Virus record (IMG/VR): IMGVR_UViG_3300029945_000001
Location: 124,001 to 188,000 of that record
Length of the DNA stretch: 64,000 bases
Direction: 5' to 3' (one strand)
Position numbers and translations under genes: made by a program. Below the pieces are notes generated by a model. That model did no database searches and was not told where the DNA came from. It saw only the letters and a list, made by a program, of their open reading frames with translations. This document shows, piece after piece, positions 1-59,838 of the stretch. Position 1 is the stretch's first letter, and the number at the start of each line of letters is the position of its first letter.

Positions 1-1170
1 TACCGCGTCCACCAACCTTTTTCCATAACGGTCTAGTTGGAAGTTCAGATCTCTCCGTACTGTAATAGGTAACCTCAGGAGATATAAGCATGACCAGATC
101 ATGCAGGTTCGTTCTTCATAGATTGAACTTCTAAGACCACATCTGAGGTGCAATGCCTCGGCAGAGATAGCTATGTCATGTAGCATAAGTAAAAAAAACA
201 CCAACGATGAAGTTGTACTCTCTAAAGAGTTAATGAACATGTTCAGACATCTTAGGTGAACATTTACACCTTCAAAAAGATGGTAGCAACAGTATGGGTG
301 AGAACAAAGCCATCATGCTGGATATCTGGTAACAGTGTCCAGACCCATGTGCCCCCAAGAAACCATTGCGCTACGAGGATCTAGTGGAATTGATGCCATG
401 CTTCGCATGCGCACAGGTTATAATAACCACATTGTCCTTATCTGAACATTTTTATTGACTCTCTCGGAGAAAACCCTCGTTTGTTGAAATGTTTATCACA
501 AAGCTGTTATGACTCAATGACATAACAGTTTACCGCTTAAGGTTAACCATCTATCCCTCATCACCGTAGTACGCCTAGGAGTTGTCCTATGTGGTCCAAA
601 ATGATGAATGATGAGCGGTGGCGAACAGCCGGGTTTGGAGACTGTGTGATATGGCCTCCTAACTGGGCTCTGTTGTTCTTTCATGCATTGACACCCAGTG
701 TATCGAGAGAATATCGGTCCGTCTCGAACGGACAACTTTCCTGCTTTAGATCGTATGTTTTGGCATATGTCTTAATCCGCACCGGTCCGGCCGATGTATG
801 GATATGGGCGTAACTCGTCAACGATCTGCTAACAGGCTGAAGAACATGGAAGGTATACCAGGACTACGATCGCCGGCTCTAACTTAAGTCATCTGGAGTC
901 ACTCAGGGACTATCCTGCGGTGAACATACGATGAGAGTTATCTTGGGATCATTTCCGTATACACACAACTGCTGTGTCCATAAGTGTTCTGTGTCTGAAA
1001 GCAAGGCATGAAGTGATTTTGTCACCGCCAACCCGCTATGTGGGAGATCCGTGAAAAGGTCTCCCACTACGGTTTCTTTAGTGTAGATTAAGGTGAACAC
1101 CGAACACGGAATGGGCCTCCGCGCAACACAATCCCCCGATGTTGCTATGTTCGGTGTTCTCCTTAGTTTA
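1..1170 (+). ncRNA. Candidate large structured non-coding RNA (5' end probably outside the window)
   Basis: No credible ORF, visibly more GC-rich than the genome. Many nested helices: 41-52/120-130, 226-234/454-462, 239-247/441-449, 501-531, 627-638/1028-1037, 680-686/1006-1012, 742-750/994-1003, 750-759/923-932, 1040-1067, 1089-1106/1148-1165. G-U wobbles favour the + strand. Confidence 0.75.
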
Positions 1171-1217
1171 TACATATTAAATTCTTCAGGCAGCTGCTTA
1201 TTTTTTATTTCAAAGAT

Positions 1218-1229
1218 AAATATATATTA
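1218..1229 (+). promoter_or_regulatory. phiKZ-type early promoter motif AAATATATATTA upstream of tRNA-like RNAs
   Basis: Same motif recurs upstream of about 10 transcription units; resembles the phiKZ early TATATTAC motif. Confidence 0.65.
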
Positions 1230-1242
1230 ATACATTGAATTC

Positions 1243-1322
1243 GCCGCAGTATCTCCTTGGCCTTCTAAGCTATTGAAAGAGTAACTGGACACATGGGGGT
1301 TCGAATCCCTCCTGCGGCGCCA
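1243..1322 (+). tRNA. Non-canonical tRNA-Arg(UCU)-like RNA lacking a normal D arm
   Basis: 7-bp acceptor GCCGCAG/CTGCGGC, G discriminator, CCA end, T arm GGGGG-TTCGAAT-CCCTC, anticodon loop CTTCTAA; D-loop-like AACTGGAC lies 3' of the anticodon arm. Confidence 0.65.
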
Positions 1323-1346
1323 ATCATTTAAAATATTCTAATCCGG

Positions 1347-1438
1347 GATCGTCGGTCTGAGTCTGACCTGGAGACCACTAAGATACCATATATCTTCTAA
1401 GCGGCAGGTCGTAGGTTCGAGTCCTACTGGGATCGCTA
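1347..1438 (+). tRNA. Degenerate or atypical tRNA-like element with the 3' half of a tRNA-Arg(UCU)
   Basis: CTTCTAAGCGGCAGGTC-GTAGGTTCGAGTCCTAC-TGGGATCG; imperfect acceptor pairing with GATCGTCG; no CCA and no canonical D arm. Confidence 0.45.
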
Positions 1439-1440
1439 AG

Positions 1441-1840
1441 CTGCCATACATCTTCTTCAGTTTCGGGTCCTTCTGAGTAAGGCATTTGAGTATGCACACC
1501 GATCCATGAAAGTGGGGACAGTGTATCGGTTCTTTTAAAAGTTTTGGCTCCGTTAACTGAGTCTGGACTGCTCACCGGCATGTATGTGTCAGTGTTGTCG
1601 GAAAAGCATACAAATGCATTAATGGTTAGAGGGTGTCCATCTTCGGATCGGCATTTTGGCCATAGTCGCTAGAAATCAGTGAAACGGGCTGGTCTCGGGA
1701 TAAATTGTAAGTCTGACGACCGAGATAAGATTAATGACTTACCAAAGTCCTGGTGTGTTAAAAAACTTATGGTGATGTAACCAGGGATGCGAACTATGTT
1801 TGCCATCGGACGCCAAGCGATCGATGAAACCATTCTAAAT
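1441..1840 (+). ncRNA. Candidate ~400-nt structured ncRNA
   Basis: ORF-free, GC-enriched; helices 1441-1451/1580-1592, 1498-1503/1525-1530, 1661-1669/1789-1798, 1692-1698/1720-1726, 1748-1754/1780-1786; followed by a terminator. Confidence 0.55.
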
Positions 1841-1872
1841 TCCACTTAACTTTTAGGTCGATGTTATCGGGC

Positions 1873-1925
1873 TGTCACATGCATGGACGTAATGTCCATG
1901 TATGTGACAAGTTCATTTATTTTTT
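1873..1925 (+). terminator. Intrinsic terminator hairpin
   Basis: TGTCACATGCATGGAC...GTCCATGTATGTGACA followed by a T-rich tract. Confidence 0.75.
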
Positions 1926-1953
1926 AATACATTTTGAGTTTTATACAAAAAAT

Positions 1954-1966
1954 AAATATATATTAC
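1954..1966 (+). promoter_or_regulatory. Early promoter motif AAATATATATTAC
   Basis: Recurrent motif just upstream of a GGAG RBS. Confidence 0.65.
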
Positions 1967-1983
1967 TTATTTAGAAATATGGA

Positions 1984-2289
1984 GTGACTATCATGAATTA
2001 TCAAATGGTATCTATTGCTCATCCTATCGATGAGCTATCTCATCGTGAAGATATGGCTAAACATCTGGACGATCTCTTCAAAAAAGATCAAAACCACAAT
2101 ACGATATTTCCTGAAGAACTTCAAAATGCTATCAGACTTATCGGCGTCGAGAAAATCGTTAGTAACTCTGATGTTACTAAGCAGGGCATTTATTATGCTC
2201 TGCGACAGAATCGTCTTCCTAGACTTCTTACGATCTCTAGGATCTTGAAAAGTATGGGCCTTCGTCTTGCTATCGTTGTTGACGAATAA
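1984..2289 (+). CDS. Putative addiction-module antidote protein (HI1420-like HTH), orphan
   Basis: Pattern 'ELSHREDMAKHLDD...GVEKIVSNSDVTKQGIYYAL..NRLPRLLTISRILKSMGLRL' matches the HI1420/TIGR02684 antidote family. Confidence 0.7.
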   Translation: MTIMNYQMVSIAHPIDELSHREDMAKHLDDLFKKDQNHNTIFPEELQNAIRLIGVEKIVSNSDVTKQGIYYALRQNRLPRLLTISRILKSMGLRLAIVVDE

Positions 2290-2723
2290 TAAAATCTGAA
2301 ATTACCAAAGCATATGGACATCTTGATAGTACATATATCCCAAAAGGAAATGATCCACAGCAACCCATCTCACTCTTACGAATTTAGAGTCTGTCTCTGT
2401 TGATAATACTCCAGACGAAGACGGACAATATGGAGTATTATTCCTCAATGGTGACAAAGGCACGGTATATACATATGTTCATTATAAAGATGCCGTTTCG
2501 GCACATGATGATTATGTTGGCAGAAAAAGAATATTTGATGTGCATAGAACCATGGCTGATGCATTACGTAAATAGTCTTTAAAGTGAAGATGTATTAGAA
2601 TGAGTGTGTGATAGTCTAACAAACTATCACACATTTGTTTTTTGTATAAAACTTAACATTAAAAACAGATGATAATAATATGTCACAAAAAAGCAATTTA
2701 TTTATTTTATAATTTCATTTAGT

Positions 2724-2800
2724 GCCCGTATAGCTTTAGCTGGTAGAGCACCGGATTTGTAATCCGGGGGTCGTGGGTTCGAATCCTACTGCGGGCACCA
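2724..2800 (+). tRNA. tRNA-Thr(UGU)
   Basis: Canonical cloverleaf, anticodon arm CCGGA-TTTGTAA-TCCGG, CCA end. Confidence 0.95.
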
Positions 2801-2805
2801 AATGA

Positions 2806-2881
2806 TGGGATATAGCTCAGTTGGTAGAGCGGGTGGCTGTTAACCACCATGTCGTAGGTTCGAGTCCTACTATCCCAGCCA
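2806..2881 (+). tRNA. tRNA-Asn(GUU)
   Basis: Canonical cloverleaf, anticodon arm GGTGG-CTGTTAA-CCACC, CCA end. Confidence 0.95.
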
Positions 2882-2899
2882 TTTTCTGCAAGATACGAC

Positions 2900-2946
2900 G
2901 AACAGGATGGTCCGACGGACCATCCTGTTCTCTATTTTATTTTTTT
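2900..2946 (+). terminator. Intrinsic terminator after the tRNAs
   Basis: GAACAGGATGGTCC...GGACCATCCTGTTC plus T tract. Confidence 0.8.
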
Positions 2947-2958
2947 CATAAAGTTATA

Positions 2959-2970
2959 AAATATATATTA
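2959..2970 (+). promoter_or_regulatory. Early promoter motif
   Basis: AAATATATATTA. Confidence 0.6.
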
Positions 2971-3006
2971 TTTAATTGAAACACACTATAGCTTCTCAAA
3001 AGGATA

Positions 3007-4175: not shown

Positions 4176-5048
4176 ATGTATCCGACATATGAGACTATAG
4201 ATCTTAATACCGATCAGTCACACCAAGAAGATAGAAAACTGTTCTTAATGAGTGGTGGTCTGGATTCAACATATATGATCTTAGAAGAATTAGAAAGTGG
4301 TAATAATATTGATATTTTGACTATTTATTGTGGCCAAGATGTCAATAAATATAAAAGAGAAAAACAAGCTATAAAAGACATCTTAAATGCACTAAAAGAA
4401 ATAAAAAACGAAAAAGACAAAAAAGATATTAAATTTGGTAAGGTTATAAAATGGTTTGTTGTCGACGATGGGCTTGATTTTAGAGGAGGTATTCTTAACA
4501 ATCATGTCTGTCTTTGTCAACCGCCGAGTTGGATTATAACAAGTATCTATGTATTACAACCTTACCACGCATCTTTAAATATCGGGTATATCACCGGAGA
4601 TAGTATTATTGGAATGTTAGATTATCTCGTCTATATTTTCGAAAATCTTACTTATATAACATTTGGAAAAACGACCAACCTTTTGTTCCCTTTATGTAGA
4701 CCTAATGGTAATGTGATGGCTGCGCGTACAAAAGAACAAGTTGTTAATGCTTTAAAAGATAGAGACTTATATCATTTGGTGTGGACTTGCGAATTCCCTT
4801 ATGAAAGAAATAATGAAATAATTGAATGTGGTGATTGTCATCCATGTCGTACTAAAAGAGCTTATGATGAACGGTTTAATAGAAAGATGTTTAAATTGCA
4901 TGCAGTATCTTTAGATACAGAAACATACGATGAAGAAAACAAGGACCAATTAAATCTTCCACCTATTCCTAAACTTTTAGTATCAAAATCAGAGTATATT
5001 GATAACAAAGAGATTACCGACGAAGCTTGTGAATCCGAACCACAATAA
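4176..5048 (+). CDS. QueC-like PP-loop ATPase (7-cyano-7-deazaguanine synthase-like)
   Basis: SGGLDST PP-loop; C-terminal WTC...CGDCHPC zinc site. Confidence 0.8.
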   Translation: MYPTYETIDLNTDQSHQEDRKLFLMSGGLDSTYMILEELESGNNIDILTIYCGQDVNKYKREKQAIKDILNALKEIKNEKDKKDIKFGKVIKWFVVDDGLDFRGGILNNHVCLCQPPSWIITSIYVLQPYHASLNIGYITGDSIIGMLDYLVYIFENLTYITFGKTTNLLFPLCRPNGNVMAARTKEQVVNALKDRDLYHLVWTCEFPYERNNEIIECGDCHPCRTKRAYDERFNRKMFKLHAVSLDTETYDEENKDQLNLPPIPKLLVSKSEYIDNKEITDEACESEPQ

Positions 5049-8297: not shown

Positions 8298-8310
8298 AGA
8301 TATATATTAC
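8298..8310 (+). promoter_or_regulatory. Early promoter motif AGATATATATTAC
   Basis: Recurrent motif. Confidence 0.65.
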
Positions 8311-8318
8311 TTTATTGT

Positions 8319-8665
8319 AGATGTATATGTGTGTCCATACATCTCAGCCAGTGTCATCTGATGATGATATTGGTAAATCTCCCACTGGGAGTGATCAATT
8401 GTCGATAGATCAAAAAACCAAAGAGTGTTAAGTCGACATTAACTCGATGGATCGTAATTTTCGTGAAGAGCTAGATGCGATAGCTTGTGGTGTAACTGGG
8501 ACATACAGAGCATGGCAACGCCTCTCGGTCACACTGCAAAATAAAGCTTCACGGAAAGTAACACTGAGGTCTTCTGTGCGGATTCCGGGACCGTCTCCTG
8601 CGGAAGCCAGACCTCCCCCAATCTGGTGTCTCTATCAAAAGAGATAGCCTCAGTGTTTTCTTCTT
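8319..8665 (+). ncRNA. Structured ~350-nt RNA or 5' leader
   Basis: Consecutive hairpins 8319-8344, 8348-8374, 8379-8390, 8423-8445, 8482-8548 and the 10-bp helix 8560-8569/8648-8657. Confidence 0.55.
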
Positions 8666-8693
8666 CCTCTCCAACAAAAGGACAATTTCTACC

Positions 8694-9016: not shown

Positions 9017-9028
9017 AAATATATATTA
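9017..9028 (+). promoter_or_regulatory. Early promoter motif
   Basis: AAATATATATTA upstream of the NYN gene. Confidence 0.6.
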
Positions 9029-17011: not shown

Positions 17012-17776
17012 ATGTCTAATAATGGACTCGTGAGTGTTTGGGCAGAAATGCCCAATGATAAACAAGAAAGTGACAGTGCTGAAATGAATACATTAGCGAA
17101 TGAAGAAACAACCGATCGCGAAGTTGTCGATAAAGAAGTTATTGTTGAATGGCCTGTTGTTATTGAAGACGATTCTGAAGAAGAACTTGTTGATGAAAAT
17201 GTTGTAACTGAAATTACACATTTAGATGTATCAGATTGTGAAATAATTTATAAATCTCCTTCTGATATATCTAAAACAGTAATAGACCTTCCTGAAGTTT
17301 GGACGAATGGTAGTTCTAAAGAAGATAAATTAATCTTGAGTGAAATTAATCCTATTGAAGAAGATAAATCAGCTGAAGACATTGCTACTGAATTTCCTTT
17401 AAGTGATTTCATATATGAAGATGATGGATTTGGAAAAGCTCAGTCGTCATTAGATGGCCCTTCTCCTTCTATTATCGAAAAGACTGTTACAACCGGACTT
17501 GGTATTTTTGAAGGATCTACTAGAATTAATGGTCTTAATGAAGCACAGACTGTTGCTGTTAGAGAAATTGCAAAGATACATCAGAAGCTATATATTGAAA
17601 TGGCAACTATGTGTAAAGATATGGAATCTATTATTAATACTCTTATTAATATGTCAGAACTTCCAAAAGATATGGTCCCTTGCAATGCGGTTCATTTTAG
17701 ACATCTCATCGAAAAACACCCACTATTCTTTAAGTTTAGAAAGACTGCTAAACTAAAAGGACGTGTTGGTAAATAA
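17012..17776 (+). CDS. Acidic hypothetical protein
   Basis: 254-aa D/E-rich ORF. Confidence 0.7.
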   Translation: MSNNGLVSVWAEMPNDKQESDSAEMNTLANEETTDREVVDKEVIVEWPVVIEDDSEEELVDENVVTEITHLDVSDCEIIYKSPSDISKTVIDLPEVWTNGSSKEDKLILSEINPIEEDKSAEDIATEFPLSDFIYEDDGFGKAQSSLDGPSPSIIEKTVTTGLGIFEGSTRINGLNEAQTVAVREIAKIHQKLYIEMATMCKDMESIINTLINMSELPKDMVPCNAVHFRHLIEKHPLFFKFRKTAKLKGRVGK

Positions 17777-17849
17777 TAATATAGAGAAATGGCAATCTAG
17801 ATTGCTACTCTGTTGTATGCATCCAACAACTTCTTCAAGGAAATTTACG

Positions 17850-18827
17850 ATGGCTATCAATTCAGTTTGGGCCGGCACCGAGTCCTTCGGTACTGCCGTT
17901 AAGTCGATCAGTGCGATCGACGCTACCATCAATATGCTCGGCAACACTTCCTGTGACATGTCTTCGGCTTTCGCCATGGAGTCGCTGAGCTCACAGATCG
18001 ACGTGATGAAGCATGCCTATGGGCAGATCAAGGCCGGCAAGTCAATCGGTGGCATGGAAACTCTTTATCCGAACGTCTTCGGCAGCGTCGCCGGCCTGGA
18101 ATCTGGTGCGTTCAACAAGGCCGCTGCCCTGGAAGGCCTTGGCGAGAAGATCAAGGAGACGGCCTCTCGTTGGTGGCAGGCTGCCAAGGAACATGTGGTC
18201 AAGTACAAGAAGTGGTACATCGGCGCCGCCATTGCCATTGCCACTACCGCCGCTGTCATCGCCGGATTCAAGACCGAAACTGGCCGCAACGTTGCGACCT
18301 GGGTTGGCAAGAAGGCCGTCAAGATCCCCGGCGTCCAGGCCGTCAAGAATTGGCTGGAGTGCATTCGTCGTTCGCGTGCTGAGCTGAATCGTGCTGCCGC
18401 CCTGGCCAAGGACAATCCTGCTGCCGCCAAGACCTGTGCCGAGAACGCCAGCAAGATCATCGCCGGCGAAAAGATGGAACTGACTCAGGTCCATCTGGAT
18501 GCTGCCGCTGCTCAGAAAGAGCTGATCGATTACAAAGCTGCCACCATTGCGGCCGCCAAAGAATCGAACTTCGCCAAGGCCGATATCGCCAAGATCGAAG
18601 CGCTCTGCGACAAGAACATCAATGCCAAGGACCCCGGCGCCAACGCCACCGCCGCTCGTGGTGCTTGGAACATGATCCTGGCTGTTCTGAAGAGCTTCGG
18701 TCATCTGATCGTCTCCGGCTTCGCCAAGGTCAGCGGTGCTGCCAAGTGGTTGTGGAGCCAGCTGTCCAGCAAGGAAGCTCGTGCCGAGACCAAGGGCAAG
18801 ATCGCTGGCGCGGCGGCCAGTGCTTAA
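17850..18827 (+). CDS. Putative abundant internal head protein (paralogue 1)
   Basis: AAGGA RBS at the 17850 start; GTE/AME/GME/GLE/ALE motifs; GC3-rich codons. Confidence 0.75.
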   Translation: MAINSVWAGTESFGTAVKSISAIDATINMLGNTSCDMSSAFAMESLSSQIDVMKHAYGQIKAGKSIGGMETLYPNVFGSVAGLESGAFNKAAALEGLGEKIKETASRWWQAAKEHVVKYKKWYIGAAIAIATTAAVIAGFKTETGRNVATWVGKKAVKIPGVQAVKNWLECIRRSRAELNRAAALAKDNPAAAKTCAENASKIIAGEKMELTQVHLDAAAAQKELIDYKAATIAAAKESNFAKADIAKIEALCDKNINAKDPGANATAARGAWNMILAVLKSFGHLIVSGFAKVSGAAKWLWSQLSSKEARAETKGKIAGAAASA

Positions 18828-18908
18828 GTCATAAGGCCGGCATTTTCGAAGAGAGACTGGAGGGGTAAAACCCTCTAGTCTTCCTTTTTAAAGAAAGGAT
18901 ATAAGTAA

Positions 18909-19916
18909 ATGTCAATTGGATCTATATGGGCTGGAGTTGAGAGTATTTCTCATACTCCAAATGTAAGTACTATCGATGTTGCTGTTAATCTATTAGATAA
19001 TTCATATATGGATCTTACGAATATTATTGCTATTGAGCATCTTGAAGATAATATTTCAGTTTTACAGAATGCTTCTAAAGCTATTAAAGATGGTAAATAT
19101 GTTTCTGGCATGGAATCTTATCTCCCTACTCATCTTTCTCGTAAGTTATTTGCTTTAGAAAATTATTCTGATACTGTAAAGGATCAGTCTATTGCCGAAG
19201 TAGATGGTGCTATTGAAGGATTTGTTGAGAAAGTTTGGGAACATCTTAAAATATTTGCTAAAGCCTTTAAAGAACATATCTTATTAGGTATCACATCAAT
19301 GCTTGTGGCTAGAACTGCTATTGCTGCAATGACCAATGGTTTGACTTCTAACAAATTTAATCCTACCTTAATTGGAACAGCCGTCGGGGCCGCTCTTGTA
19401 TTGCGTATAGTATCTGGTATCTATTTCTTTGTTGGTATCTTTAGACTCTTTAAACACTATAGTACCAAAACCAACGAAGCTATTGACAATGCTGAAAAAG
19501 ATCCTGGTAGTTATGATACTGAAATGGATAATCTTATTAATAATTTTGATAATGCTAAAAAATCTAAACCTACTGGTGGTACTAAAGATATTAAAACAGC
19601 TATGAAGGATGCTGAGAAGGTTGTAGATGAATCTAAAAATAATATGGAAATGATTAATAGTTTAGTTAAAAAGGTTGAAGTTAGAGTGTCTAATCTTGAG
19701 GCTAAGAAAAGTATAGAAGATACCGAAAAACAATCCAAGATCCGTAAAGTATATCAGAAGATCTTAGGGTTTTTAAATAAGCTTTATGAATTCTGTAAGT
19801 CTGGTGTTGTTAAGTCTTATAATTTTGTAAAATCTGTTTATAATAAAGTTATGGGAAAAGATGCAAATAAGAGTACTACAGATAAAGGCGATGTAGCTAT
19901 CAAAAAGCTTGATTAA
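18909..19916 (+). CDS. Putative internal head protein (paralogue 2)
   Basis: N-terminus SIWAGVES; AIE/GME/ALE motifs; central hydrophobic segment. Confidence 0.72.
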   Translation: MSIGSIWAGVESISHTPNVSTIDVAVNLLDNSYMDLTNIIAIEHLEDNISVLQNASKAIKDGKYVSGMESYLPTHLSRKLFALENYSDTVKDQSIAEVDGAIEGFVEKVWEHLKIFAKAFKEHILLGITSMLVARTAIAAMTNGLTSNKFNPTLIGTAVGAALVLRIVSGIYFFVGIFRLFKHYSTKTNEAIDNAEKDPGSYDTEMDNLINNFDNAKKSKPTGGTKDIKTAMKDAEKVVDESKNNMEMINSLVKKVEVRVSNLEAKKSIEDTEKQSKIRKVYQKILGFLNKLYEFCKSGVVKSYNFVKSVYNKVMGKDANKSTTDKGDVAIKKLD

Positions 19917-29884: not shown

Positions 29885-30039
29885 AAGAGATCCTTGATGT
29901 CTTATGTTGAAAATACATATGATGTCGGTCTTTAAGTTAATTTAATTTTTGATTTATACAAAAAAATACACAGGATGGTGAGCTTTCGCCCACCATCCCA
30001 TGCATCACGTGTTTTTCGACTTTGACTTATTCGCAGGTA

Positions 30040-32355
30040 TTAAGCCTGGGGATCAGTCTCATCGATTTCAGCATCGGCATTAACTAAGGCCTGACCGACA
30101 CCATCGACACCTGAAGTCAGAACGCCATCGTTGCCAACCAGAGGATTGTTGTTCACCTGGATGGATTCAGACAACATCAGCTTCAGAATGGCATCGAGAC
30201 CCTTAACGCTGATGATCATGCCGATCGGGTTCGTCGGGTAGACGACCTCACGGCTGTTGGCGACAGCGCGCTGAGTCACGGCCATGGCGTTGTTGAACGT
30301 GAACTTGCCGGCGAAGATGCCACGGTCCAGATTCTTGCCAAAGCTGATGACGCTTTCCGGGTCAGCATCGCGAACCGGGACGATGAGCATCAGACCTTCA
30401 AAGTTCTTGTACGACGTGGCGACGCAGTCGATGCGTGAGCCGTTCGGAAGATAGAAGCTGTAGTCTGCCGACGGAGCTTCTTCGACGCGAGTGTCGTTCA
30501 GTTCGTTGAAGTAGGTTTTGATGGCCAGCAGGGTTGCAATGATCGTCGGGGTGGTGACCAGACGATACACAGCCTTTTCGCCAGGGTTCAGCTGGTTCAG
30601 GTACAGCGAGGTCAGCTGCGAGTCGGCGATGATCGCATTCAGACGATTCATAACCAGCGAATGCATGTCCGAGTTACGCTCGGTTTCACGCATAACGACG
30701 GCATTGGAAACGTCCAGAACACCACGCCAGACATTCGGGTTACACAGAGTGCCGGCCAGGAAGTCCTGAGCCACCGAATTGTACCAGTCGATGAGGGGAT
30801 CGGTTTCCTCGTGCTTCAGGCGATTGTAGACGTTGTTCAGGCACTCGCCGATCATGCGAACGGCCTTGGCATCATTGCCCAGCGACATGATATCATTGAG
30901 GATCTTGATGATGTCTTCGGCCGACTTGCCTTCAGTGTCCTTGATGCTGTATTCGGCGGTGTACATGCGAGACACGGGAATATAGAAGGACTGCTCCTTC
31001 TGTGTCACGCGAGCCGAAATATTCGCCTTGCGCATATTTTCTTCGCTGTACTGGGCGAAGGGTTCGAAAGCGAACAGCGAGAAGGACAGCTTGTTGTAAG
31101 CAGTATTCACGGCATCCGCAACGGTCGTGCCGGCGGCAGGGAAAAGCTGGGCGTTCAAGCTACCATAGCCTGTCGAGGCGCCGGTCTTGAGGTTAAGCTT
31201 CATGGTGAAGTTGAGATCGATTTCGGCACCGGCGTCACCAAGAACAGACAACAACGATGACGCAGTGCCCGCAGCGGTAACAGCAGTCGAAGGAATGACA
31301 CGCTGGATACGAGGAGCTGCTTCACGATCGGCCGAGTCGTTCGTGTTGGTGCGCTGCACCAGACGCGAGGCTGCCTGATATTCGGTACGAACAGGGATAT
31401 ATTCCGTGGTCGTGCCGTCGGTGACGGCGATCCAGACTTCGCGAACATAGGCGCCTTCGCCGATGATGTCAGTCCAGTTCAGATTGTCGTAGCCGACGGT
31501 GTTGGAGCTGACGCCGAGCTTGAACATGTTGAACGGCACGCCGACCTTAACCAAGTTCTGGTGAACCAGGACAGGGTTGGTCGAATCGTCGTTTTCCATG
31601 AACAGTTCGACACGTTTGGCGGTGGTGTCGACGAACGAAGGATCGCGCATCAGCCGGATCAGAGGAGTGCGAATGGCGTTCGAATAGCGAATATCGGCGT
31701 TCGGGTTCTGCGAAGCAGCCAGATCGTAAACATCGCCATTGGCGATCTTGGTGACGACGACGGTTTCTTCGGTAGCGATGCGCGGCAGGATACGATCGAT
31801 CAGCGACTTGAAGACGCGCAGCATGGTCAGCGAGATCGACAGACGAACATCGGTGACGACGCTATCGATGCCTTCACCGAACGACTCGCCGGCAGCGATA
31901 TCGTTAGTGACAGCATTGACACCACCATTGCCGAACAGCGAGCCCAGAGCGATGCATTCGGTTCCGGCAACGCCGCCCTTGGCATCAGCAAAGTTGGCAT
32001 TGGTCGAATGCAGATGCCCCATGACACCAAGCGTAGCAGCTTCGATGGCCGCCGCAATGCGAGGATTGGTACGATCCAGACGATTGTTCTGGGTCGAGCC
32101 GCTCATCGATTCGATGGTACCGATGACGAAGTTTTCAACGGCGGCCAGGTCGATGCGCTCTTCAGCGCCACGAATGACGGTCATCGGCTTGTCGAAATAT
32201 TCCAGGCCGGCAGCATTGGTGACCGAAGCAACCAATGAATTCGAACTCAGAAATGATTCTGTCGCCGCAGCCAGAGTGAACGCAGCACCCAGAGACAGAC
32301 CGCTGTTCTGGGCAACACCACGCAGCTGCTGCTTCCATGAATTAAGTTTGCTCAT
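30040..32355 (-). CDS. Major capsid protein (phiKZ gp120-like)
   Basis: ~770 aa, GC3-rich, N-terminal A-X-E cleavage motifs (ATE, GLE, AVE, AGE); helicase-gp119-MCP arrangement as in phiKZ. Confidence 0.82.
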   Translation of the reverse strand: MSKLNSWKQQLRGVAQNSGLSLGAAFTLAAATESFLSSNSLVASVTNAAGLEYFDKPMTVIRGAEERIDLAAVENFVIGTIESMSGSTQNNRLDRTNPRIAAAIEAATLGVMGHLHSTNANFADAKGGVAGTECIALGSLFGNGGVNAVTNDIAAGESFGEGIDSVVTDVRLSISLTMLRVFKSLIDRILPRIATEETVVVTKIANGDVYDLAASQNPNADIRYSNAIRTPLIRLMRDPSFVDTTAKRVELFMENDDSTNPVLVHQNLVKVGVPFNMFKLGVSSNTVGYDNLNWTDIIGEGAYVREVWIAVTDGTTTEYIPVRTEYQAASRLVQRTNTNDSADREAAPRIQRVIPSTAVTAAGTASSLLSVLGDAGAEIDLNFTMKLNLKTGASTGYGSLNAQLFPAAGTTVADAVNTAYNKLSFSLFAFEPFAQYSEENMRKANISARVTQKEQSFYIPVSRMYTAEYSIKDTEGKSAEDIIKILNDIMSLGNDAKAVRMIGECLNNVYNRLKHEETDPLIDWYNSVAQDFLAGTLCNPNVWRGVLDVSNAVVMRETERNSDMHSLVMNRLNAIIADSQLTSLYLNQLNPGEKAVYRLVTTPTIIATLLAIKTYFNELNDTRVEEAPSADYSFYLPNGSRIDCVATSYKNFEGLMLIVPVRDADPESVISFGKNLDRGIFAGKFTFNNAMAVTQRAVANSREVVYPTNPIGMIISVKGLDAILKLMLSESIQVNNNPLVGNDGVLTSGVDGVGQALVNADAEIDETDPQA

Positions 32356-32357
32356 TG

Positions 32358-34052
32358 TCAAAGAACTCCTGAAATACGCGTATTAAGACCAAGCTTGGTC
32401 AAGAGCGTTTTGGTTGCATCAATGGAAGATGTGAATAACCACAGCTTACACCATTCGTCAAGATAGGCTTTAGTTTCTGAAGAATACTGAGGATCATTCT
32501 TAATATCACCATTGAGTTTAGCAACAGCGAGTCTAACAAAATGATCATTTAGAGTCTCTTTGGAATCGATCAGCGGAATGAACAGCTGAGAATTCTCATC
32601 TTCGGAGATTTCATCAGAGACTTCAGATGATGCAGAACCATCGTCTTGATTGTCTATATTATCATCATCACCATTATCTATAGTGTTTGTATCACCAAAG
32701 TTAGCGTCATCAGATGTTCCATCGCCAGATTCATCGGTTCCTTGTGAATTGGTGTCATCATCGCTGATAGTACTATCAGGATTAGCATCACTATTACTAT
32801 TATTATTGGTAGTATCTTCACCAGAAATATCAGAACTTGGGGAAGCATCAGACGAATCATCTTTGTTAGGAACTTTCGTTTCATCGTCTGATCCCTTTGT
32901 GTCTTTATTATCTACTGTATTTTCAGGATCATCTTCTTCTGATATGGGTTTATCTGCTTCGATATTATCATCTTGATTATTTTCAGTGGCATCTGTTTTA
33001 TCTTCATTTTCCTCATCGTCTTCTTCATCATCTTTAACATCGCCTAGAGCTTCTAATCCATAAAAATATCCAGTATCGTGTCCACTACCGGATACGAAAC
33101 CATTTGGTGATTTTTTATAATAATAATCATCAACATAAATAAGAACTCTATCAATACTATCATAATTTTCAATTCCTTCTAAAGCATCACGTATTCTTTC
33201 CCAATAACGAGTGGCGTCTTTAACATCATAAATGTAATAACCAGTATTGTCGGCACCAACATTTTCAAAATTGCTAACATGTATGGCAAATGCTTTATTC
33301 TTAGTATATTTCAAACAAAGATTTGCACAGACAAAATTCTTATATGAAATAATACCATTATTAATAGCATTAATAGGAAGAGCAGTCAATGCAATAACTT
33401 TAGCAATTTCTAAAAAGCTAGGTTTCATCGTAAGAAACTTAAGACTATTTATCATCTTCCAGTAATTATCCGAATTCTTATTAAATTTGCTATTACAAAT
33501 CAATTCATCTGTATCAATGACAACATGATGGATAGGATCTAATTGTAATGGGAATAGATCGCTTTTCAAATTGACTCTAGGGACATAAAAAATAGTTTTT
33601 GTATTGGTAGTTTCAAAATTAATAGCTGAGAAGATAGCTAGAATACCATTTAATTTAGATAATCCGTGTTTCAGATATAATCCTTTTAATAAAGGAATAT
33701 CACTATCAATAATATTGTTTGTATGAATATACTTATTTACATATTGACCAATCTGGCTATCTTTAACTGATTGAGACATAGTAATGATATTATCTTTAAC
33801 CAATGATAATAAAGCAAGAACATGAGAATGAGTATTAGATTCAACAAATATATTAAAATATTTATACATAATAATTTGTTCTAAAAGAAGCTTATCATTA
33901 TCAAGATCGACATTTCTAATGTCTATATTTATTTTAAGATCTAAATTAATAGCAGTATCATCAAAAATAACTTTATCAAGTACTGAAATATTTCTGAAAA
34001 TATCATTTAAAACAATAAGTGGCTGTCTGTCCATGGGAGCATTGTCCTTCAC
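32358..34052 (-). CDS. Virion head-associated protein with an acidic low-complexity region (phiKZ gp119-like position)
   Basis: Between helicase and capsid genes; GLE motif before the D/E/N-rich tract. Confidence 0.6.
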   Translation of the reverse strand: MKDNAPMDRQPLIVLNDIFRNISVLDKVIFDDTAINLDLKINIDIRNVDLDNDKLLLEQIIMYKYFNIFVESNTHSHVLALLSLVKDNIITMSQSVKDSQIGQYVNKYIHTNNIIDSDIPLLKGLYLKHGLSKLNGILAIFSAINFETTNTKTIFYVPRVNLKSDLFPLQLDPIHHVVIDTDELICNSKFNKNSDNYWKMINSLKFLTMKPSFLEIAKVIALTALPINAINNGIISYKNFVCANLCLKYTKNKAFAIHVSNFENVGADNTGYYIYDVKDATRYWERIRDALEGIENYDSIDRVLIYVDDYYYKKSPNGFVSGSGHDTGYFYGLEALGDVKDDEEDDEENEDKTDATENNQDDNIEADKPISEEDDPENTVDNKDTKGSDDETKVPNKDDSSDASPSSDISGEDTTNNNSNSDANPDSTISDDDTNSQGTDESGDGTSDDANFGDTNTIDNGDDDNIDNQDDGSASSEVSDEISEDENSQLFIPLIDSKETLNDHFVRLAVAKLNGDIKNDPQYSSETKAYLDEWCKLWLFTSSIDATKTLLTKLGLNTRISGVL

Positions 34053-38060: not shown

Positions 38061-38076
38061 ATTTGAAATAAAAAAT

Positions 38077-38088
38077 ACATATATATTA
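38077..38088 (+). promoter_or_regulatory. Early promoter motif followed by a leader hairpin (38096-38137)
   Basis: ACATATATATTA; AGAGAAGACTGGTTAAGA...TCTTGATCAGTCTATTCTCT. Confidence 0.6.
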
Positions 38089-38166
38089 ATATGTAGAGAA
38101 GACTGGTTAAGAACGCGTCTTGATCAGTCTATTCTCTAAAATCCGTTAAAATTGGGAATTAAATAA

Positions 38167-39462
38167 ATGCACTTTGATATTTCCACGCTGACTGCTGACG
38201 CTTTGACTTCTGCTACCATGATTGGTACTCTTGTTTCGGAGTCCGCAGCCCCCCTCATCGACTGGGACAGCATGCGCAAGGAGATCGAATCCTGGCCGCT
38301 GGTCTCGGAGGTGCCGCAGGACAAGGACGTTCCGCAGCTGAACATGACTTCGATCACCGGCAAGACCTGCCGTGAGCTGGTCAAGGGCGGCATCAAGACC
38401 GAGAATTTCATCGCCATCATCAAGTCGATGCTGAATGTCCGCGCCCATGTCATGTCCTCGAACGCCGGCAAGGCCCAGACTCTTTATCCGACCGTGAACG
38501 AATATGGCGCCCGTGAAGTCGGCAATGTCATCGTCGTCGCCAACAAGCATGCCGGCAAGCCCCGGTCGATCAACATCAATCGCCAGGCTTATGACCATCC
38601 GAAGAATGCCAATGACGAGACCCGTGGTCGTCAGCGGCACGTCAGCTGCGTCGTCGAAGTCGGTGGCTATATCGGTTTCGCTTTCTACAACAAGTTCTCT
38701 CCGAACACCCTGATCCAGACTTTCTTCCAGGTCACGCATGTCATTCCGCTCGGCGGCGACAGCAAGCTGTTCGAAATCGGCATGACCCTGGTTCATGCGG
38801 CGTTCGCTTCGGCCGCCGACGGCAAGGTCCTGGCCACTCCTCTGGAAGATGATACTCCGCTGGCCAATCTGATCGATGCGATGCAGCGTCGTTTGGCCGT
38901 CGGTGCTCTTCAACTGGATTGGCCGCTGTACAGTCAGATCTTCGTTCCGCATTTCGGCCTGAAGAATGACACCGCCGCCGGCATCGCCAAGATCGATCAT
39001 TGGAAGGATCTGCACTCCGACACCGTGACTGCCAATCTCGACAAGCCGGTCAGTGCCGACATCACCGACATTGAAATCGATCTGATGCACAATCTGGTCG
39101 AAGCGCGTGCCACCTCCACGCCGAAGACCGACGGCGATGGCAATGCCGTCTATGATGAAACTGCTCTGGTCATCAGCCATCACATGGACGACACCGGCAA
39201 TACCATCCGTGCGATGATGACCCTGATCAACAACAACGAAACCATCTGGACCGGCGTCACCGACATCACGGCCAACAACTTCGATCGTCCGGTCGGTGAT
39301 GACATCACCTATCCGAGCGGCAAGTTGAAGGCGGCGGTTCTCGATCCGGCCCTGATTCTCGGCGCCACCACGTTCCAGCGTCTGAAGACCGACGTCATCA
39401 ATCGTCAGGTCGAAGGAAAGCATCCTGTGGAGAACCCGACCATCCTGGGCATTCTGCGTTAA
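38167..39462 (+). CDS. Probably highly expressed early protein of unknown function
   Basis: 431 aa, GC3-rich, own promoter and terminator. Confidence 0.85.
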   Translation: MHFDISTLTADALTSATMIGTLVSESAAPLIDWDSMRKEIESWPLVSEVPQDKDVPQLNMTSITGKTCRELVKGGIKTENFIAIIKSMLNVRAHVMSSNAGKAQTLYPTVNEYGAREVGNVIVVANKHAGKPRSININRQAYDHPKNANDETRGRQRHVSCVVEVGGYIGFAFYNKFSPNTLIQTFFQVTHVIPLGGDSKLFEIGMTLVHAAFASAADGKVLATPLEDDTPLANLIDAMQRRLAVGALQLDWPLYSQIFVPHFGLKNDTAAGIAKIDHWKDLHSDTVTANLDKPVSADITDIEIDLMHNLVEARATSTPKTDGDGNAVYDETALVISHHMDDTGNTIRAMMTLINNNETIWTGVTDITANNFDRPVGDDITYPSGKLKAAVLDPALILGATTFQRLKTDVINRQVEGKHPVENPTILGILR

Positions 39463-39481
39463 GCAGAAAACCAACTAAAGT

Positions 39482-39528
39482 AGATACGGAGGAGCGCAAG
39501 CTCCTCCGTATCTCTTTATTTTTTTATT
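39482..39528 (+). terminator. Intrinsic terminator with a GCAA loop
   Basis: AGATACGGAGGAGC-GCAA-GCTCCTCCGTATCT plus T tract. Confidence 0.85.
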
Positions 39529-40332
39529 TTAATCATAAACCAATTTACTCAAAGTCAATTTAAAATTATGTTCTACCATTTGAAATGATTGAATAACTGT
39601 AGCATATGCATCTATTTGAATAGCAAATATTCTTAATATATTACTCAAGTCACGAATATCATCAGTTGTTAAGTTAAATGTTTTCTTGTTGTTTTCTAAT
39701 TGTGAAATTATTTTATCTGTTTCTTTCTCTAAATCAAATATATGTTTTCCATGAGAAATAGAGTCTTTGAAAGTATCATCTAGTTTCAGTAAATGATCTG
39801 TAATATAATTTAAATCTTCTACGGAAGAAACAACATTTTTCAAAATGGTATTAGAAATACTATTTTTTACAAATATAGTTTGTAGTTGTTTTTCAAGATA
39901 TGAAATATCTACTTTATTGATCTTTTCTAGAATATGTCTAATTTTATGAAATTCTTTATTTATTATAAATTTATGCATAACCTCTATAGTGTCATTGATA
40001 TCTATTTTATCAAGAAGTTTAAATAATGTATCTGTAGCATATCTATACGTACATATCATTCCGGTTGGTATATAGATCATAGAAAACATATTTATTTCTT
40101 TATTTTTTAGATAAGAATTTACAGCAGTATGATTAGAATCAACAAATACTTTTAATTCTGATCTTTTAAAATCACTAAATAAGCCTAATATACTTGTACT
40201 AAGATTCTTAAAATATTTAATAAAGAAATCAAATATTTTATTTTGGAATGAAATATTTTCTAATCCATAATAGTCAATATCTGTCAGATACTGATTTAAA
40301 GGAACATACGAAATGTCTGTTCTGTAAATCAT
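39529..40332 (-). CDS. Putative virion protein
   Basis: N-terminal GLE processing motif; helical; near uvsX. Confidence 0.55.
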   Translation of the reverse strand: MIYRTDISYVPLNQYLTDIDYYGLENISFQNKIFDFFIKYFKNLSTSILGLFSDFKRSELKVFVDSNHTAVNSYLKNKEINMFSMIYIPTGMICTYRYATDTLFKLLDKIDINDTIEVMHKFIINKEFHKIRHILEKINKVDISYLEKQLQTIFVKNSISNTILKNVVSSVEDLNYITDHLLKLDDTFKDSISHGKHIFDLEKETDKIISQLENNKKTFNLTTDDIRDLSNILRIFAIQIDAYATVIQSFQMVEHNFKLTLSKLVYD

Positions 40333-45678: not shown

Positions 45679-46314
45679 TTATGTATTCCCCTGATCTATA
45701 GTTGTATTAATAGCATCAAATGGCGCCATCAAATCTAACGTAACTAATTCATCAAAGTTGTTATTATTACATAATGTTTCTATCTGATTTGAAAGATCAA
45801 ATTGTGTTTTATAAATTGTTTGAATACACTGATTAATGAATGTGGTAATTGATGTTATATCTGAAACTTCTAGTGCTATACGACCACACCAATAGATGGG
45901 AGAAGCGATAGTACCATTTGTTAATTGAGATAATAGAGAATTCAAATCGTTATTTAGAATACTAATATTAACACCGTTATAAATAACAGATTTACTAAGT
46001 GCAGTATCTCTGTTTGCTTTAGCGATATTTGATAATGTAGTTAATAGTTCAGTATAAGCTTTAGGTGTTGCCGTATATGTGATATCTGGACCATTTCTGT
46101 TTTCAACAACATCGTAATACGTAATATCAGGAAGAGTATCATGATAGTTAATATCAACAAATCCATTTAATGTTCTAAAATCAGGATTGGATATCATAGA
46201 TCCATGATACTGAAATCCATTTAACGTAAAGAATGCGCCATCACTAAAGTATTCATTTAAAACAGGGTGATAATATTTTTCGGTATCTAAGAAACCTGTT
46301 GTCTGACTTGTCAT
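45679..46314 (-). CDS. Tail fibre assembly-like (DUF4376-like) protein
   Basis: F.LNG.QY N-terminus; A.A.RD...I.YNG and helical C-terminus. Confidence 0.5.
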   Translation of the reverse strand: MTSQTTGFLDTEKYYHPVLNEYFSDGAFFTLNGFQYHGSMISNPDFRTLNGFVDINYHDTLPDITYYDVVENRNGPDITYTATPKAYTELLTTLSNIAKANRDTALSKSVIYNGVNISILNNDLNSLLSQLTNGTIASPIYWCGRIALEVSDITSITTFINQCIQTIYKTQFDLSNQIETLCNNNNFDELVTLDLMAPFDAINTTIDQGNT

Positions 46315-46350
46315 CTTTAGTTTTCCTTGTATGTGTTTGCTTTATTAAAA

Positions 46351-46509
46351 CTATTTAGTGAGACCTAAAATAAGCCCAGTTCCTGTTATGGTAGCATAAC
46401 TTATGCCCACAATACAATTACCGGCAGCACCGCCACCAGATCCAGAATTTCCAAGACCGTCGTCAGTACCACGAGATCCAGCCTGACCGAAATCGCTCCA
46501 TCCGCCAGC
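46351..46509 (-). pseudogene. Orphaned former C-terminus of the glycine-rich tail protein
   Basis: Start-less frame AGGWSDFGQAGSRGTDDGLGNSGSGGGAAGNCIVGISYATITGTGLILGLTK*, similar to the C-terminus of 46683-47408. Confidence 0.7.
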
Positions 46510-46670: not shown

Positions 46671-46682
46671 TTCAAATTTCTC

Positions 46683-59775: not shown

Positions 59776-59792
59776 GTTCGTTTCTGGAATGT

Positions 59793-59838
59793 ATGGTAGG
59801 GGTCGAAAGATCCCTACCATCATTTCTTTTATTTTTCT
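59793..59838 (+). terminator. Terminator after chmA
   Basis: ATGGTAGGGGTC-GAAA-GATCCCTACCAT plus T tract. Confidence 0.8.

What the first reader, a model, noticed from the sequence alone, without database searches (positions are those of the whole stretch)
1..1170. Candidate giant structured ncRNA (>1.1 kb) next to the tRNA cluster of a nucleus-forming jumbo phage
Seen: about 1.2 kb with no credible ORF and markedly higher GC than the AT-rich genome. It folds by eye into several multi-helix domains with nested long-range pairings (226-234/454-462, 239-247/441-449, 627-638/1028-1037, 680-686/1006-1012, 742-750/994-1003, 750-759/923-932, 1089-1106/1148-1165). G-U wobbles point to the + strand, and it probably starts left of the window. 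Known: the large ornate RNAs GOLLD and ROOL occur in phages beside tRNA genes, and some form RNA-only multimers. Inference: this may be a new or divergent class of giant phage RNA (scaffold, decoy or ribozyme). I recognise no rRNA, tmRNA, RNase P or group I core in it.
Basis: partly seen in the sequence, partly recalled or inferred. Interest (0 to 1): 0.9.

Follow-up and report, generated by a model that had tools for sequence, protein, structure and literature searches.

The report
Structured non-coding RNA in phage tRNA operon
Window 15-1170 is a non-coding stretch of a phiKZ-like jumbo phage that folds far more stably than chance on the + strand and sits inside an early tRNA operon. It looks like a string of separate folded domains with no known relatives, not a proven single giant RNA.

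Summary
The core observation holds. Window 15-1170 has no coding signal: no 3-base periodicity, stops of all three kinds in all six frames, and no Pfam or PHROG hit for any ORF piece. Its GC is 0.45 in a genome of about 0.27. It folds much better than shuffles on the + strand (z -7.4) than on the - strand (-3.4), and better than eight mRNA controls from the same genome (+0.5 to -2.9). No Rfam 15 family matches.

- It does not start left of the window. Bases 1-14 are the 3' end of tRNA-Met, and 23-60 is a decayed half-copy of that tRNA.
- Helices of 7-12 bp are what shuffled sequence also gives. Only 3 of the 7 listed helices are in the thermodynamic fold.
- The extra stability sits in separate domains (196-494, 614-1037 and several long hairpins), not in one global fold.

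Context: an early-type promoter lies about 1.8 kb upstream. It is followed by another 1.45-kb structured block, tRNA-Leu, tRNA-Lys, tRNA-Met and then this block, so the whole reads as one roughly 3-kb tRNA/ncRNA operon.

No homologue was found anywhere and all copies are 100% identical, so covariation could not be tested. Function is inferred only. Two adjacent small RNA motifs do show covariation.

The parts
1..14 (+). 3' end (including CCA) of tRNA-Met(CAU). The gene starts 61 bases left of the window.
   Evidence: ARAGORN and Rfam on L001, which is identical to the window and extends it leftward.
23..60 (+). Decayed partial duplicate of tRNA-Met, from anticodon loop to T arm.
   Evidence: Direct repeat D4, 79% over 28 nt. 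The local alignment of window 23-45 is z 4.6 against shuffled tRNA, and the similarity continues to about 60, roughly 27 of 34 identical by my count.
15..1170 (+). Block C, the finding: ORF-free, GC 0.45, strongly folding non-coding stretch.
   Evidence: No periodicity. Fold z -7.4 on + and -3.4 on -, against mRNA controls of +0.5 to -2.9. No Rfam hit. No gene called here by the public gene callers.
196..494 (+). Domain 2: an interrupted closing stem of about 37 bp (196-247 with 441-494) around a three-hairpin junction (248-282, 283-374, 375-439).
   Evidence: Pair probabilities 0.8-1.0. z -6.6 on + and -2.8 on - with 200 shuffles.
501..531 (+). Hairpin with an 11-bp stem.
   Evidence: Probability 0.97. 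z -5.6 for 497-535.
614..1037 (+). Domain 3: hairpins 627-669, 674-713 and 717-733, plus a sub-domain 742-1008. The closing helix is weak (P about 0.3).
   Evidence: z -4.4 on + and -1.8 on -. The sub-domain 742-1008 alone gives only z -1.7.
1040..1067 (+). Hairpin with a 10-bp GC-rich stem.
   Evidence: Probability 0.93. z -5.4 for 1038-1070.
1084..1170 (+). Domain 4: a 22-bp near-perfect stem carrying two small hairpins. It marks the 3' end of block C.
   Evidence: Inverted repeat I1. Probability 0.94-0.98. z -6.5 on + and -5.6 on -.
1201..1229 (+). A run of six T (1201-1206), then a bipartite early-promoter-like motif: TTTCAAA at 1208-1214 and TATATATTA at 1221-1229.
   Evidence: The motif recurs with the same layout upstream of gene starts, and 11 of 12 copies in the window are on +. 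No canonical intrinsic terminator was scored here.
1243..1322 (+). tRNA-like RNA without a D arm, with an encoded CCA and a CUUCUAA loop (anticodon-like UCU).
   Evidence: Rfam tRNA 29.2 bits. ARAGORN does not call it. A family with covarying stems exists in other phages.
1382..1438 (+). Truncated tRNA-like piece (acceptor and T arm, plus a CUUCUAAG motif), probably a tRNA-Arg(UCU) remnant.
   Evidence: Rfam tRNA 24.7 bits. My own tRNA model gives 30.4 bits. Window 1394-1436, inside this piece, is 91% identical to Agrobacterium phage Atu_ph07 over 43 nt.
1440..1915 (+). Block D: ORF-free and not globally over-stable (z -1.1), ending in a 17-bp terminator hairpin at 1873-1909.
1709..1787 (+). 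Conserved 'D-core' RNA motif: two covarying helices around invariant CCAAAGUC, AACUUA and GGUGAUGUAA.
   Evidence: Aligned with phiHQ, Psa21, RP13 and one metagenome contig (L031; a second, L034, is 98.5% identical to it here). 6 of 12 pairs show compensatory changes.

Best explanation
Block C (window 15-1170) is a transcribed non-coding RNA segment that has been kept for its structure. It is the downstream part of an early, polycistronic tRNA/ncRNA operon.

Proposed sequence of events:
1. Transcription starts at an AT-rich early-type promoter about 1.8 kb left of the window.
2. It runs through a first structured block of 1.45 kb (B), then tRNA-Leu, tRNA-Lys and tRNA-Met, and then C.
3. Ordinary tRNA end-processing at tRNA-Met frees the 5' end of C.
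4. C folds as a string of four or five independent domains, not one globule.
5. Its near-perfect stems of about 21-22 bp (226-247/441-462 and 1084-1106/1148-1170) are the kind of duplex that RNase III cuts, so C may be cut further into stable pieces of 100-400 nt.

Most likely role: the product acts as RNA early in infection, as a stable decoy or scaffold for host RNA-binding or RNA-cutting factors.

Shown: it is non-coding, its stability is strand-specific and above chance, its GC is held high, and it lies within the operon layout.
Inferred: co-transcription, processing, stability of the product, and any function.
For: Non-coding; the public gene callers also leave about 4 kb empty here.

Structure above chance and strand-specific:
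- C: z -7.4 on +, -3.4 on -. B: -5.95 on +, -2.9 on -.
- Eight mRNA controls of equal length from the same genome: +0.5 to -2.9.
- Domain 2: -6.6 on +, -2.8 on -.
- Paired fraction 0.67, against 0.62 +/- 0.02 in shuffles with a maximum of 0.645.

Composition: GC of 0.45 is kept over 1.15 kb without coding constraint, in a genome of about 0.27 whose other GC-rich islands are tRNAs or strongly periodic genes such as the capsid gene.

Operon layout:
- The bipartite motif TTTCAAA-N(6-11)-TATATATTA lies at window -1823, 1221, 1957 and 2962, with none between -1815 and 1221.
- phiKZ early promoters are an AT-rich consensus read by the virion RNA polymerase (PMC8244752).
- tRNAs flank both blocks on the same strand.

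Same kind of island elsewhere: two metagenome contigs that carry the D-core are about 3 kb ORF-free and non-periodic, with z -6 to -10.6 on the D-core strand.

Precedent: GOLLD and ROOL lie near tRNAs and in prophages, possibly co-transcribed with them (PMC5737381). The T4 tRNA cluster also encodes stable RNAs of unknown role (my own knowledge).
Against: - There is no comparative support. No homologue was found in 50,697 phage genomes, in any fetched locus, or in the partial motif and peptide-pattern scans of IMG/VR, so not one base pair is backed by covariation. JGI metagenomes and 185,579 bacterial genomes were scanned only with the D-core and tRNA-like patterns, never with a C-derived one.
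- Helix counts and the longest helix are within the shuffle range.
- The 150-nt local z-scores are modest.
- Two sub-regions, 15-190 and 742-1008, are near chance.
- Only 1 GNRA tetraloop among 20 predicted loops.
- G-U and A-C mismatch counts are tied at 2 to 2.
- Hairpins 1038-1070 and 1084-1170 are equally stable on both strands, so a DNA-level inverted repeat would explain them as well.
- tRNA debris at 23-60 and 1382-1438 shows that this region also accumulates non-functional remnants.
- No clear terminator follows C.
- No expression data exist.
Confidence: 0.5

Rival explanations
1. One reading: one giant ornate RNA of more than 1.1 kb with a defined global tertiary fold, a new GOLLD/ROOL-like class that may multimerise or catalyse.
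For: Size, tRNA neighbourhood and phage context fit GOLLD and ROOL (PMC5737381). The whole-block z of -7.4 is stronger than that of any single domain. A weak closing helix, 614-623/1026-1037, spans 420 nt.
Against: - No pairing is predicted between domains 2, 3 and 4.
- Almost no GNRA loops.
- No Rfam match even at E up to 10.
- No conserved homologues, whereas GOLLD and ROOL are widespread.
Confidence: 0.17
2. A passive structured spacer or trailer. The hairpins only protect the tRNA precursor from exonucleases, guide its processing, or insulate neighbouring transcription units. The excised RNA is discarded.
For: C lies directly between tRNA-Met and the next promoter. It has long stems of RNase III type. 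There is no conservation outside this phage.
Against: Over 1.1 kb, plus 1.45 kb for block B, held at GC 0.45 in a 27% GC genome is far more than protection or processing needs. Other tRNA spacers in the same cluster are 5-130 nt and AT-rich.
Confidence: 0.15
3. A non-functional remnant: decayed tRNA genes, relics of a mobile element, or recently acquired foreign GC-richer DNA that has not yet drifted to the phage's AT content.
For: - A tRNA-Met half-copy at 23-60 and a truncated tRNA at 1382-1438.
- A marginal cloverleaf-like match at 375-440, E 0.15.
- The neighbouring small RNA modules are mobile. The D-core is present in phiHQ but absent from its closest relatives. L031 and L034 share 1.3 kb inside unrelated flanks.
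Against: - My own tRNA model with filters off finds no further remnants in B or C.
- There is no residual codon periodicity.
- Junk does not fold 7 sd better than its own shuffles, and preferentially on the transcribed strand.
- No donor sequence was found in cultured phages; bacterial genomes were never searched with a C-derived query.
Confidence: 0.12
4. A DNA-level element, such as a replication origin, packaging site or recombination site, built from inverted repeats.
For: Several hairpins are as stable on the - strand as on the + strand (1038-1070 and 1084-1170). The region is gene-free.
Against: Overall stability is clearly asymmetric between strands. There are no iterons or direct-repeat arrays. 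It is embedded in a tRNA transcription unit.
Confidence: 0.04
5. A hidden protein-coding gene: recoded, frameshifted or a pseudogene.
For: A 74-aa ORF at 589-813 has an AGGAG 8 nt upstream of its ATG.
Against: Periodicity is 0.67, against at least 7 for real genes. Stops of all three kinds occur in every frame. No family hit for any piece. Peptide-pattern scans find only the phage itself and one chance match.
Confidence: 0.02

Closest known systems
GOLLD and ROOL large bacterial/phage RNAs (both are Rfam families)
   Same: They are large, non-coding, often next to tRNA genes and in phages or prophages, possibly co-transcribed with the tRNAs, and of unknown function (PMC5737381).
   Different: No covariance-model match even at permissive thresholds. 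GOLLD and ROOL have conserved multistem junctions and pseudoknots and are widespread. Block C is an orphan, looks modular, and has almost no GNRA loops.
Stable RNAs of unknown function encoded in the phage T4 tRNA gene cluster (species 1 and 2, genes rnaC/rnaD; my own knowledge, not checked here)
   Same: They are non-tRNA RNAs inside a phage tRNA transcription unit and are released by the tRNA-processing machinery.
   Different: The T4 RNAs are about 120-140 nt. Blocks B and C are about ten times longer. Processing and stability of C are only inferred.
rRNA operons and phage T7 early transcripts processed at long RNase III stems (my own knowledge)
   Same: They have a polycistronic layout with tRNAs between long structured RNAs, and stems of about 20 bp or more that could be RNase III sites.
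   Different: No rRNA homology at all. RNase III cleavage was not tested.
phiKZ-type early transcription units (AT-rich promoters read by the virion RNA polymerase; PMC8244752)
   Same: An AT-rich bipartite promoter-like motif recurs upstream of the RNA blocks and of early-looking genes. In phiKZ two transcription start sites are associated with the phage tRNAs.
   Different: phiKZ itself has no block resembling B or C. The promoter assignment here rests on motif recurrence only.

Membership tests
GOLLD RNA | Match to the Rfam covariance model (conserved 3' half with junctions and pseudoknots) | tested here: not met
   No hit at gathering score or at E up to 10 on window 1-3000, nor at E up to 5 on the whole window.
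GOLLD / ROOL | Location near tRNA genes in a phage or prophage | tested here: met
   tRNA-Met ends at base 14. Six ARAGORN-called tRNAs and two tRNA-like pieces (one truncated) lie within 4.8 kb, and the capsid protein is phiKZ-type.
ROOL RNA | Match to the Rfam covariance model (six multistem junctions, three pseudoknots) | tested here: not met
   No hit.
Group I or group II intron | Catalytic core match (Rfam models) and flanking exons of an interrupted gene | tested here: not met
   No Rfam hit. The flanks are a complete tRNA-Met and a promoter, not split exons.
RNase P RNA / tmRNA / rRNA | Match to the Rfam models | tested here: not met
   None in the window. The only tmRNA hit on L001 (11 bits against a gathering score of 47) lies outside block C.
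Array of decayed tRNA genes | Repeated cloverleaf or T-arm remnants along the block | tested here: not met
   My own tRNA covariance model with filters off finds only a marginal match at 375-440 (E 0.15). Pairwise alignment adds one half-copy at 23-60.
Stable RNA of a phage tRNA operon (T4 type) | Co-transcribed with tRNAs from one promoter | tested here: inconclusive
   The promoter-like motif is at -1823 and there is none before 1221. However, a T-run follows tRNA-Lys and there are no transcript data.
Stable RNA of a phage tRNA operon (T4 type) | Accumulates as a discrete processed RNA | not testable with these tools
   Needs RNA-seq or a Northern blot.
Structured functional ncRNA (general) | Base pairs supported by covariation among homologues | not testable with these tools
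   No homologue found. All copies are 100% identical.
Protein-coding gene | Open frame, codon periodicity, family match | tested here: not met

The most novel reading that the evidence does not exclude
Blocks B and C, and the similar ORF-free, hyper-stable islands on metagenome contigs L031 and L034, are founding examples of a new kind of kilobase-scale structured RNA. Jumbo phages would express these from early tRNA operons, built from exchangeable RNA modules such as the D-core and the D-armless tRNA-like RNA. The RNAs would act, for example, as decoys for host RNA-targeting defences or RNases.
Probability: 0.25. Interest if true: 0.8.

Novelty: new variant of a known kind. Interest (0 to 1): 0.55.

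Why it matters
Large structured RNAs of unknown function are rare in bacteria and phages; GOLLD and ROOL are the known cases. None has been described for phiKZ-like jumbo phages.

Here about 4 kb of an early region is given over to RNA instead of protein. It holds two blocks longer than 1.1 kb, several tRNAs, a tRNA-like RNA with unusual connectivity, and a small motif conserved across distant jumbo phages. It sits beside a known anti-defence gene, the Lockin nucleotide sponge.

If the blocks prove to be stable functional RNAs, they would add an RNA layer to jumbo-phage host takeover and would offer new large RNAs for structural study. If they prove to be processing spacers or debris, the case shows that a strong folding z-score alone does not establish a functional RNA.

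Tried and rejected
1. Known RNA families. Rfam 15 was run at gathering score on the whole window, at E up to 10 on 1-3000, at E up to 1 on the upstream locus and at E up to 5 on the whole window. Only tRNAs matched.

2. Coding. Rejected on periodicity, stop counts under any code, and Pfam/PHROG searches of each ORF piece taken separately.

3. Homologues by DNA.
- blastn of C and B against 50,697 phage genomes found nothing for C or B.
- nhmmer of B, C and D against every fetched locus found only the D-core.

4. Homologues by synteny.
- The flanking helicase has no relative above 44% identity, and its relatives are not syntenic.
- The flanking Lockin gene has over 4,600 relatives, but in unrelated contexts.

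5. Homologues anchored on the D-core. The single metagenome scan gave two new contigs but no C-like sequence.

6. Fuzzy scans of IMG/VR using the two longest mechanical ORFs of C as peptide patterns found only the phage itself plus one chance hit in a 61% GC contig.

7. Similarity between B, C and D: none.

8. tRNA-remnant hypothesis: only the 23-60 piece.

9. D-core-like motifs inside B or C: none.

10. G-U against A-C mismatch asymmetry: counts too small to decide.

11. Chimallin or PhuZ in the window, to check 'nucleus-forming': not found by PDB sequence search or Pfam.

12. My by-eye ideas that the D-core resembles RNase P CR-I/CR-V, a group I P4/P7 core or a box C/D k-turn were not supported by any model hit and were dropped.

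Full report
WHAT THE WINDOW IS. The window is AT-rich, about 0.25-0.30 GC over most 1-kb bins. It encodes a phiKZ-type major capsid protein (PF25620, E 8e-15), an SbcC-like protein, a phage DNA polymerase and a divergent DnaB. It is 100% identical to several public contigs of one phage of about 229 kb. I did not find chimallin or PhuZ in the window. 'phiKZ-like jumbo phage' is therefore supported, but 'nucleus-forming' is not shown.

WHAT LIES TO THE LEFT. Locus L001 is the same phage and adds 9 kb upstream. Window 1-14 is the CCA end of tRNA-Met(CAU). In window coordinates the layout is:
- a 107-aa GC-rich gene, a Lockin nucleotide sponge (-2292 to -1969);
- tRNA-Ser (-1942 to -1853);
- a promoter-like motif at -1823;
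- an ORF-free block B (about -1810 to -359);
- tRNA-Leu, a perfect hairpin, tRNA-Lys, tRNA-Met;
- block C (15-1170);
- a promoter-like motif at 1221;
- a tRNA-like RNA (1243-1322) and a truncated tRNA-like piece (1382-1438);
- block D (1440-1915), ending in a strong terminator hairpin;
- a promoter-like motif at 1957 and a small HI1420-type gene;
- tRNA-Thr and tRNA-Asn.
Public gene callers call nothing across about 4 kb here. The finding is thus one part of a 4-kb RNA island, and it does not run off the left edge of the window.

IS IT NON-CODING? Yes.
- The longest ORFs are 74 and 90 aa.
- All six frames carry stops of all three kinds, so no stop reassignment opens a frame.
- The 3-base periodicity signal is 0.3-0.9 for B, C and D, against 7-50 for ten coding regions, including the GC-rich ones.
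- Each ORF piece, searched on its own, hits no Pfam or PHROG family.

IS IT STRUCTURED BEYOND CHANCE? Yes in total energy, no helix by helix.
- Full-length C folds at -394 kcal/mol, against -322 +/- 10 for dinucleotide shuffles. That is z -7.4 on the + strand and -3.4 on the - strand.
- B gives -5.95 on + and -2.9 on -. D gives only -1.1. The tool's own run on 1-1000 agrees, at -5.8 on + and -1.7 on -.
- Eight mRNA segments of the same length from this genome give +0.5 to -2.9.
- By domain: 196-494 z -6.6 (- strand -2.8); 614-1037 z -4.4 (-1.8); hairpins 497-535, 1038-1070 and 1084-1170 z -5.4 to -6.5; but 15-190 z -1.9 and 742-1008 z -1.7.
- Shuffled copies of C, however, produce a longest helix of 10.5 +/- 1.3 bp and 11.5 +/- 2.6 helices of at least 7 bp, against 12 and 13 observed. 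Such helices are what any 1.1-kb sequence of this composition gives.
- Only 226-234/454-462, 239-247/441-449 and 1089-1106/1148-1165 are in the minimum-energy fold with probability above 0.97. The proposed 680-686/1006-1012 and 750-759/923-932 lose to local hairpins.
- No pairing is predicted between the main domains. Only 1 of 20 hairpin loops is GNRA.
The picture is a string of stable domains, not one ornate globule.

STRAND AND TRANSCRIPTION.
- All tRNAs are on the + strand.
- The motif TATATATTA occurs 12 times in the window, 11 of them on +.
- At seven sites it is preceded by TTTCAAA-like bases 6-11 nt upstream, and the intergenic ones sit just upstream of a gene or RNA start. This fits the AT-rich early promoters of phiKZ, which are read by the virion RNA polymerase (PMC8244752).
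- One copy lies at -1823 and the next at 1221, with none between. B, three tRNAs and C therefore look like one early unit of about 3 kb.
- This is inference. A T-run follows tRNA-Lys, and no canonical terminator is scored after C.
- A direct count of G-U against A-C mismatches is tied at 2 to 2 for C. The strand call rests on the z-score asymmetry and on the context.

WHAT IT IS NOT.
- It matches no Rfam 15 family at any threshold I could use, so it is not GOLLD, ROOL, an intron, RNase P, tmRNA or rRNA by model.
- It is not a decayed tRNA array. A tRNA covariance model that I built, run with filters off, finds only a marginal match at 375-440. Alignment adds one decayed half-copy of tRNA-Met at 23-60.
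- B, C and D are unrelated to one another.

HOMOLOGUES. None were found for C or B.
- blastn against 50,697 phage genomes found nothing.
- The phage is an isolated lineage. Its helicase has no relative above 44% identity, and those relatives are not syntenic.
- Scans anchored on the neighbouring conserved motifs, and fuzzy peptide-pattern scans of C itself, returned only the same phage.
- Every copy is identical. The covariation test that would settle the matter cannot be run with the data in reach.

SUPPORT FROM NEIGHBOURS AND FROM ANOTHER LINEAGE.
- The 80-nt core of block D (1709-1787) is conserved in Pseudomonas phages phiHQ and Psa21, in Ralstonia phage RP13 (there it sits just upstream of tRNA-Leu), and in two metagenome contigs (L031 and L034, which are 98.5% identical here, so one of them is in the alignment). 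Both helices covary, and 6 of 12 pairs show double changes. It is absent from 185,579 bacterial genomes.
- Those two metagenome contigs are themselves about 3 kb without ORFs or periodicity. They fold with z -6.3 to -10.6 on the D-core strand.
- Kilobase-scale, hyper-stable, gene-free RNA islands carrying this motif therefore exist in at least one other lineage.

MECHANISM. I commit to this: C is a selected, structured RNA segment of an early tRNA/ncRNA operon. It is freed at its 5' end by tRNA-Met processing and is perhaps cut again at its 21-22-bp stems. It acts as stable RNA, most plausibly as a decoy or scaffold during host takeover.
- The locus is flanked by a Lockin immune-signal sponge, an antitoxin-like gene and tRNAs, which suits an early counter-defence region. 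That link is circumstantial.
- The confidence values are on different scales. Functional structured RNA in this sense: about 0.5. As a sub-case of that, a single giant ornate RNA: about 0.17, and a new class of such RNAs: about 0.25. As alternatives to it: passive spacer 0.15, debris 0.12, DNA element 0.04, coding 0.02.

VERDICT. The claims of a single giant RNA, of extension to the left, and of specific long-range pairings are not supported. Novelty rests on absence of matches, not on positive comparative evidence. Interest is 0.55.

Noticed in passing
L001:3178-4630 (- strand), i.e. about 1810 to 359 bases left of window position 1: Block B, a second ORF-free structured block of 1.45 kb between tRNA-Ser and tRNA-Leu. 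GC 0.43, no periodicity, fold z -5.95 on + and -2.9 on -, with 11 helices of at least 9 bp against 4.8 +/- 1.9 in shuffles. It is unrelated in sequence to block C.
   Followed up: partly
window 1709-1787; also L004:3980-4080, L016:1526-1603, L017:1509-1584, L031, L034: 'D-core': a conserved RNA motif of about 80 nt with two covarying helices around invariant CCAAAGUC, AACUUA and GGUGAUGUAA. It is found only in phiKZ-like or large phages (phiHQ, Psa21, RP13, this phage) and in two metagenome contigs. It matches no Rfam family and is absent from 185,579 bacterial genomes. In phiHQ it sits in an insertion that the closest relatives lack.
   Followed up: partly
window 1243-1322; also L021:1066-1145, L022:7842-7921, L023:11268-11347, L024:9536-9615, L026:2769-2848: A phage-specific tRNA-like RNA family without a D arm.
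- It has a 7-bp acceptor stem in which all pairs covary, a T arm, and one extended arm ending in a 7-nt loop CUNNUAA (UCU, CCU or GAU).
- A conserved linker, AAAGAGUAACYGGAYACAUG, precedes the T arm.
- It lies unannotated inside tRNA clusters of Streptomyces phages, crAss-like Kehishuvirus and other IMG/VR contigs. ARAGORN misses it.
- It is absent from bacterial genomes by pattern.
It may be a working tRNA with rewired connectivity.
   Followed up: partly
window 1382-1438 and 23-60: Two tRNA fragments: a truncated tRNA-Arg(UCU)-like 3' part, and a decayed half-copy of tRNA-Met. They show duplication and decay within the cluster.
   Followed up: yes
L001:4788-5111 (- strand), about 2 kb left of the window: A 107-aa GC-rich gene of Pfam family Lockin (PF26760), described as a phage sponge for immune signalling nucleotides. 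It has over 4,600 homologues at 62-80% identity in unrelated contexts and lies directly upstream of the RNA island.
   Followed up: partly
window 8312-8693: Another GC-rich (0.43), non-periodic stretch that starts right after an early-promoter-like motif (8301) and precedes a small ORF and a NYN-domain gene. Fold z is -4.05 on + and -1.7 on -. It may be a structured leader or a separate ncRNA.
   Followed up: partly
window 29906-32519, 38071-39584, 17715-19007, 58047-59888, 46274-47311: The protein-coding GC islands (0.51-0.56 GC in a genome of about 0.27) are strongly periodic genes, including the phiKZ-type capsid gene. GC content seems to track a class of genes, possibly highly expressed or conserved ones. 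The cause was not examined.
   Followed up: no
L031 (2,798 bp) and L034 (3,297 bp), whole contigs: These metagenome contigs have almost no ORFs and no periodicity, and fold with z -6.3 to -10.6 on the D-core strand. They share 1.3 kb at 98.5% inside unrelated flanks. Of the 20 differences, 12 fall in unpaired positions, 3 keep a pair and 5 break one. L034 also carries a T-arm-like hairpin (E 0.0007).
   Followed up: partly
window 1208-1229, 1957-1965, 2962-2970, 8301-8309, 9020-9028, 38080-38088: A bipartite promoter-like motif, TTTCAAA-N(6-11)-TATATATTA(A/C), almost always on the + strand and, at the intergenic sites, just upstream of gene or RNA starts. It is a likely early promoter of this phage.
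   Followed up: partly
window 1984-2289 and 4176-5048: A small HI1420-type antitoxin-like HTH gene sits between the RNA blocks and tRNA-Thr/Asn. A QueC-like gene lies just downstream. Both fit an early counter-defence or modification region.
   Followed up: no
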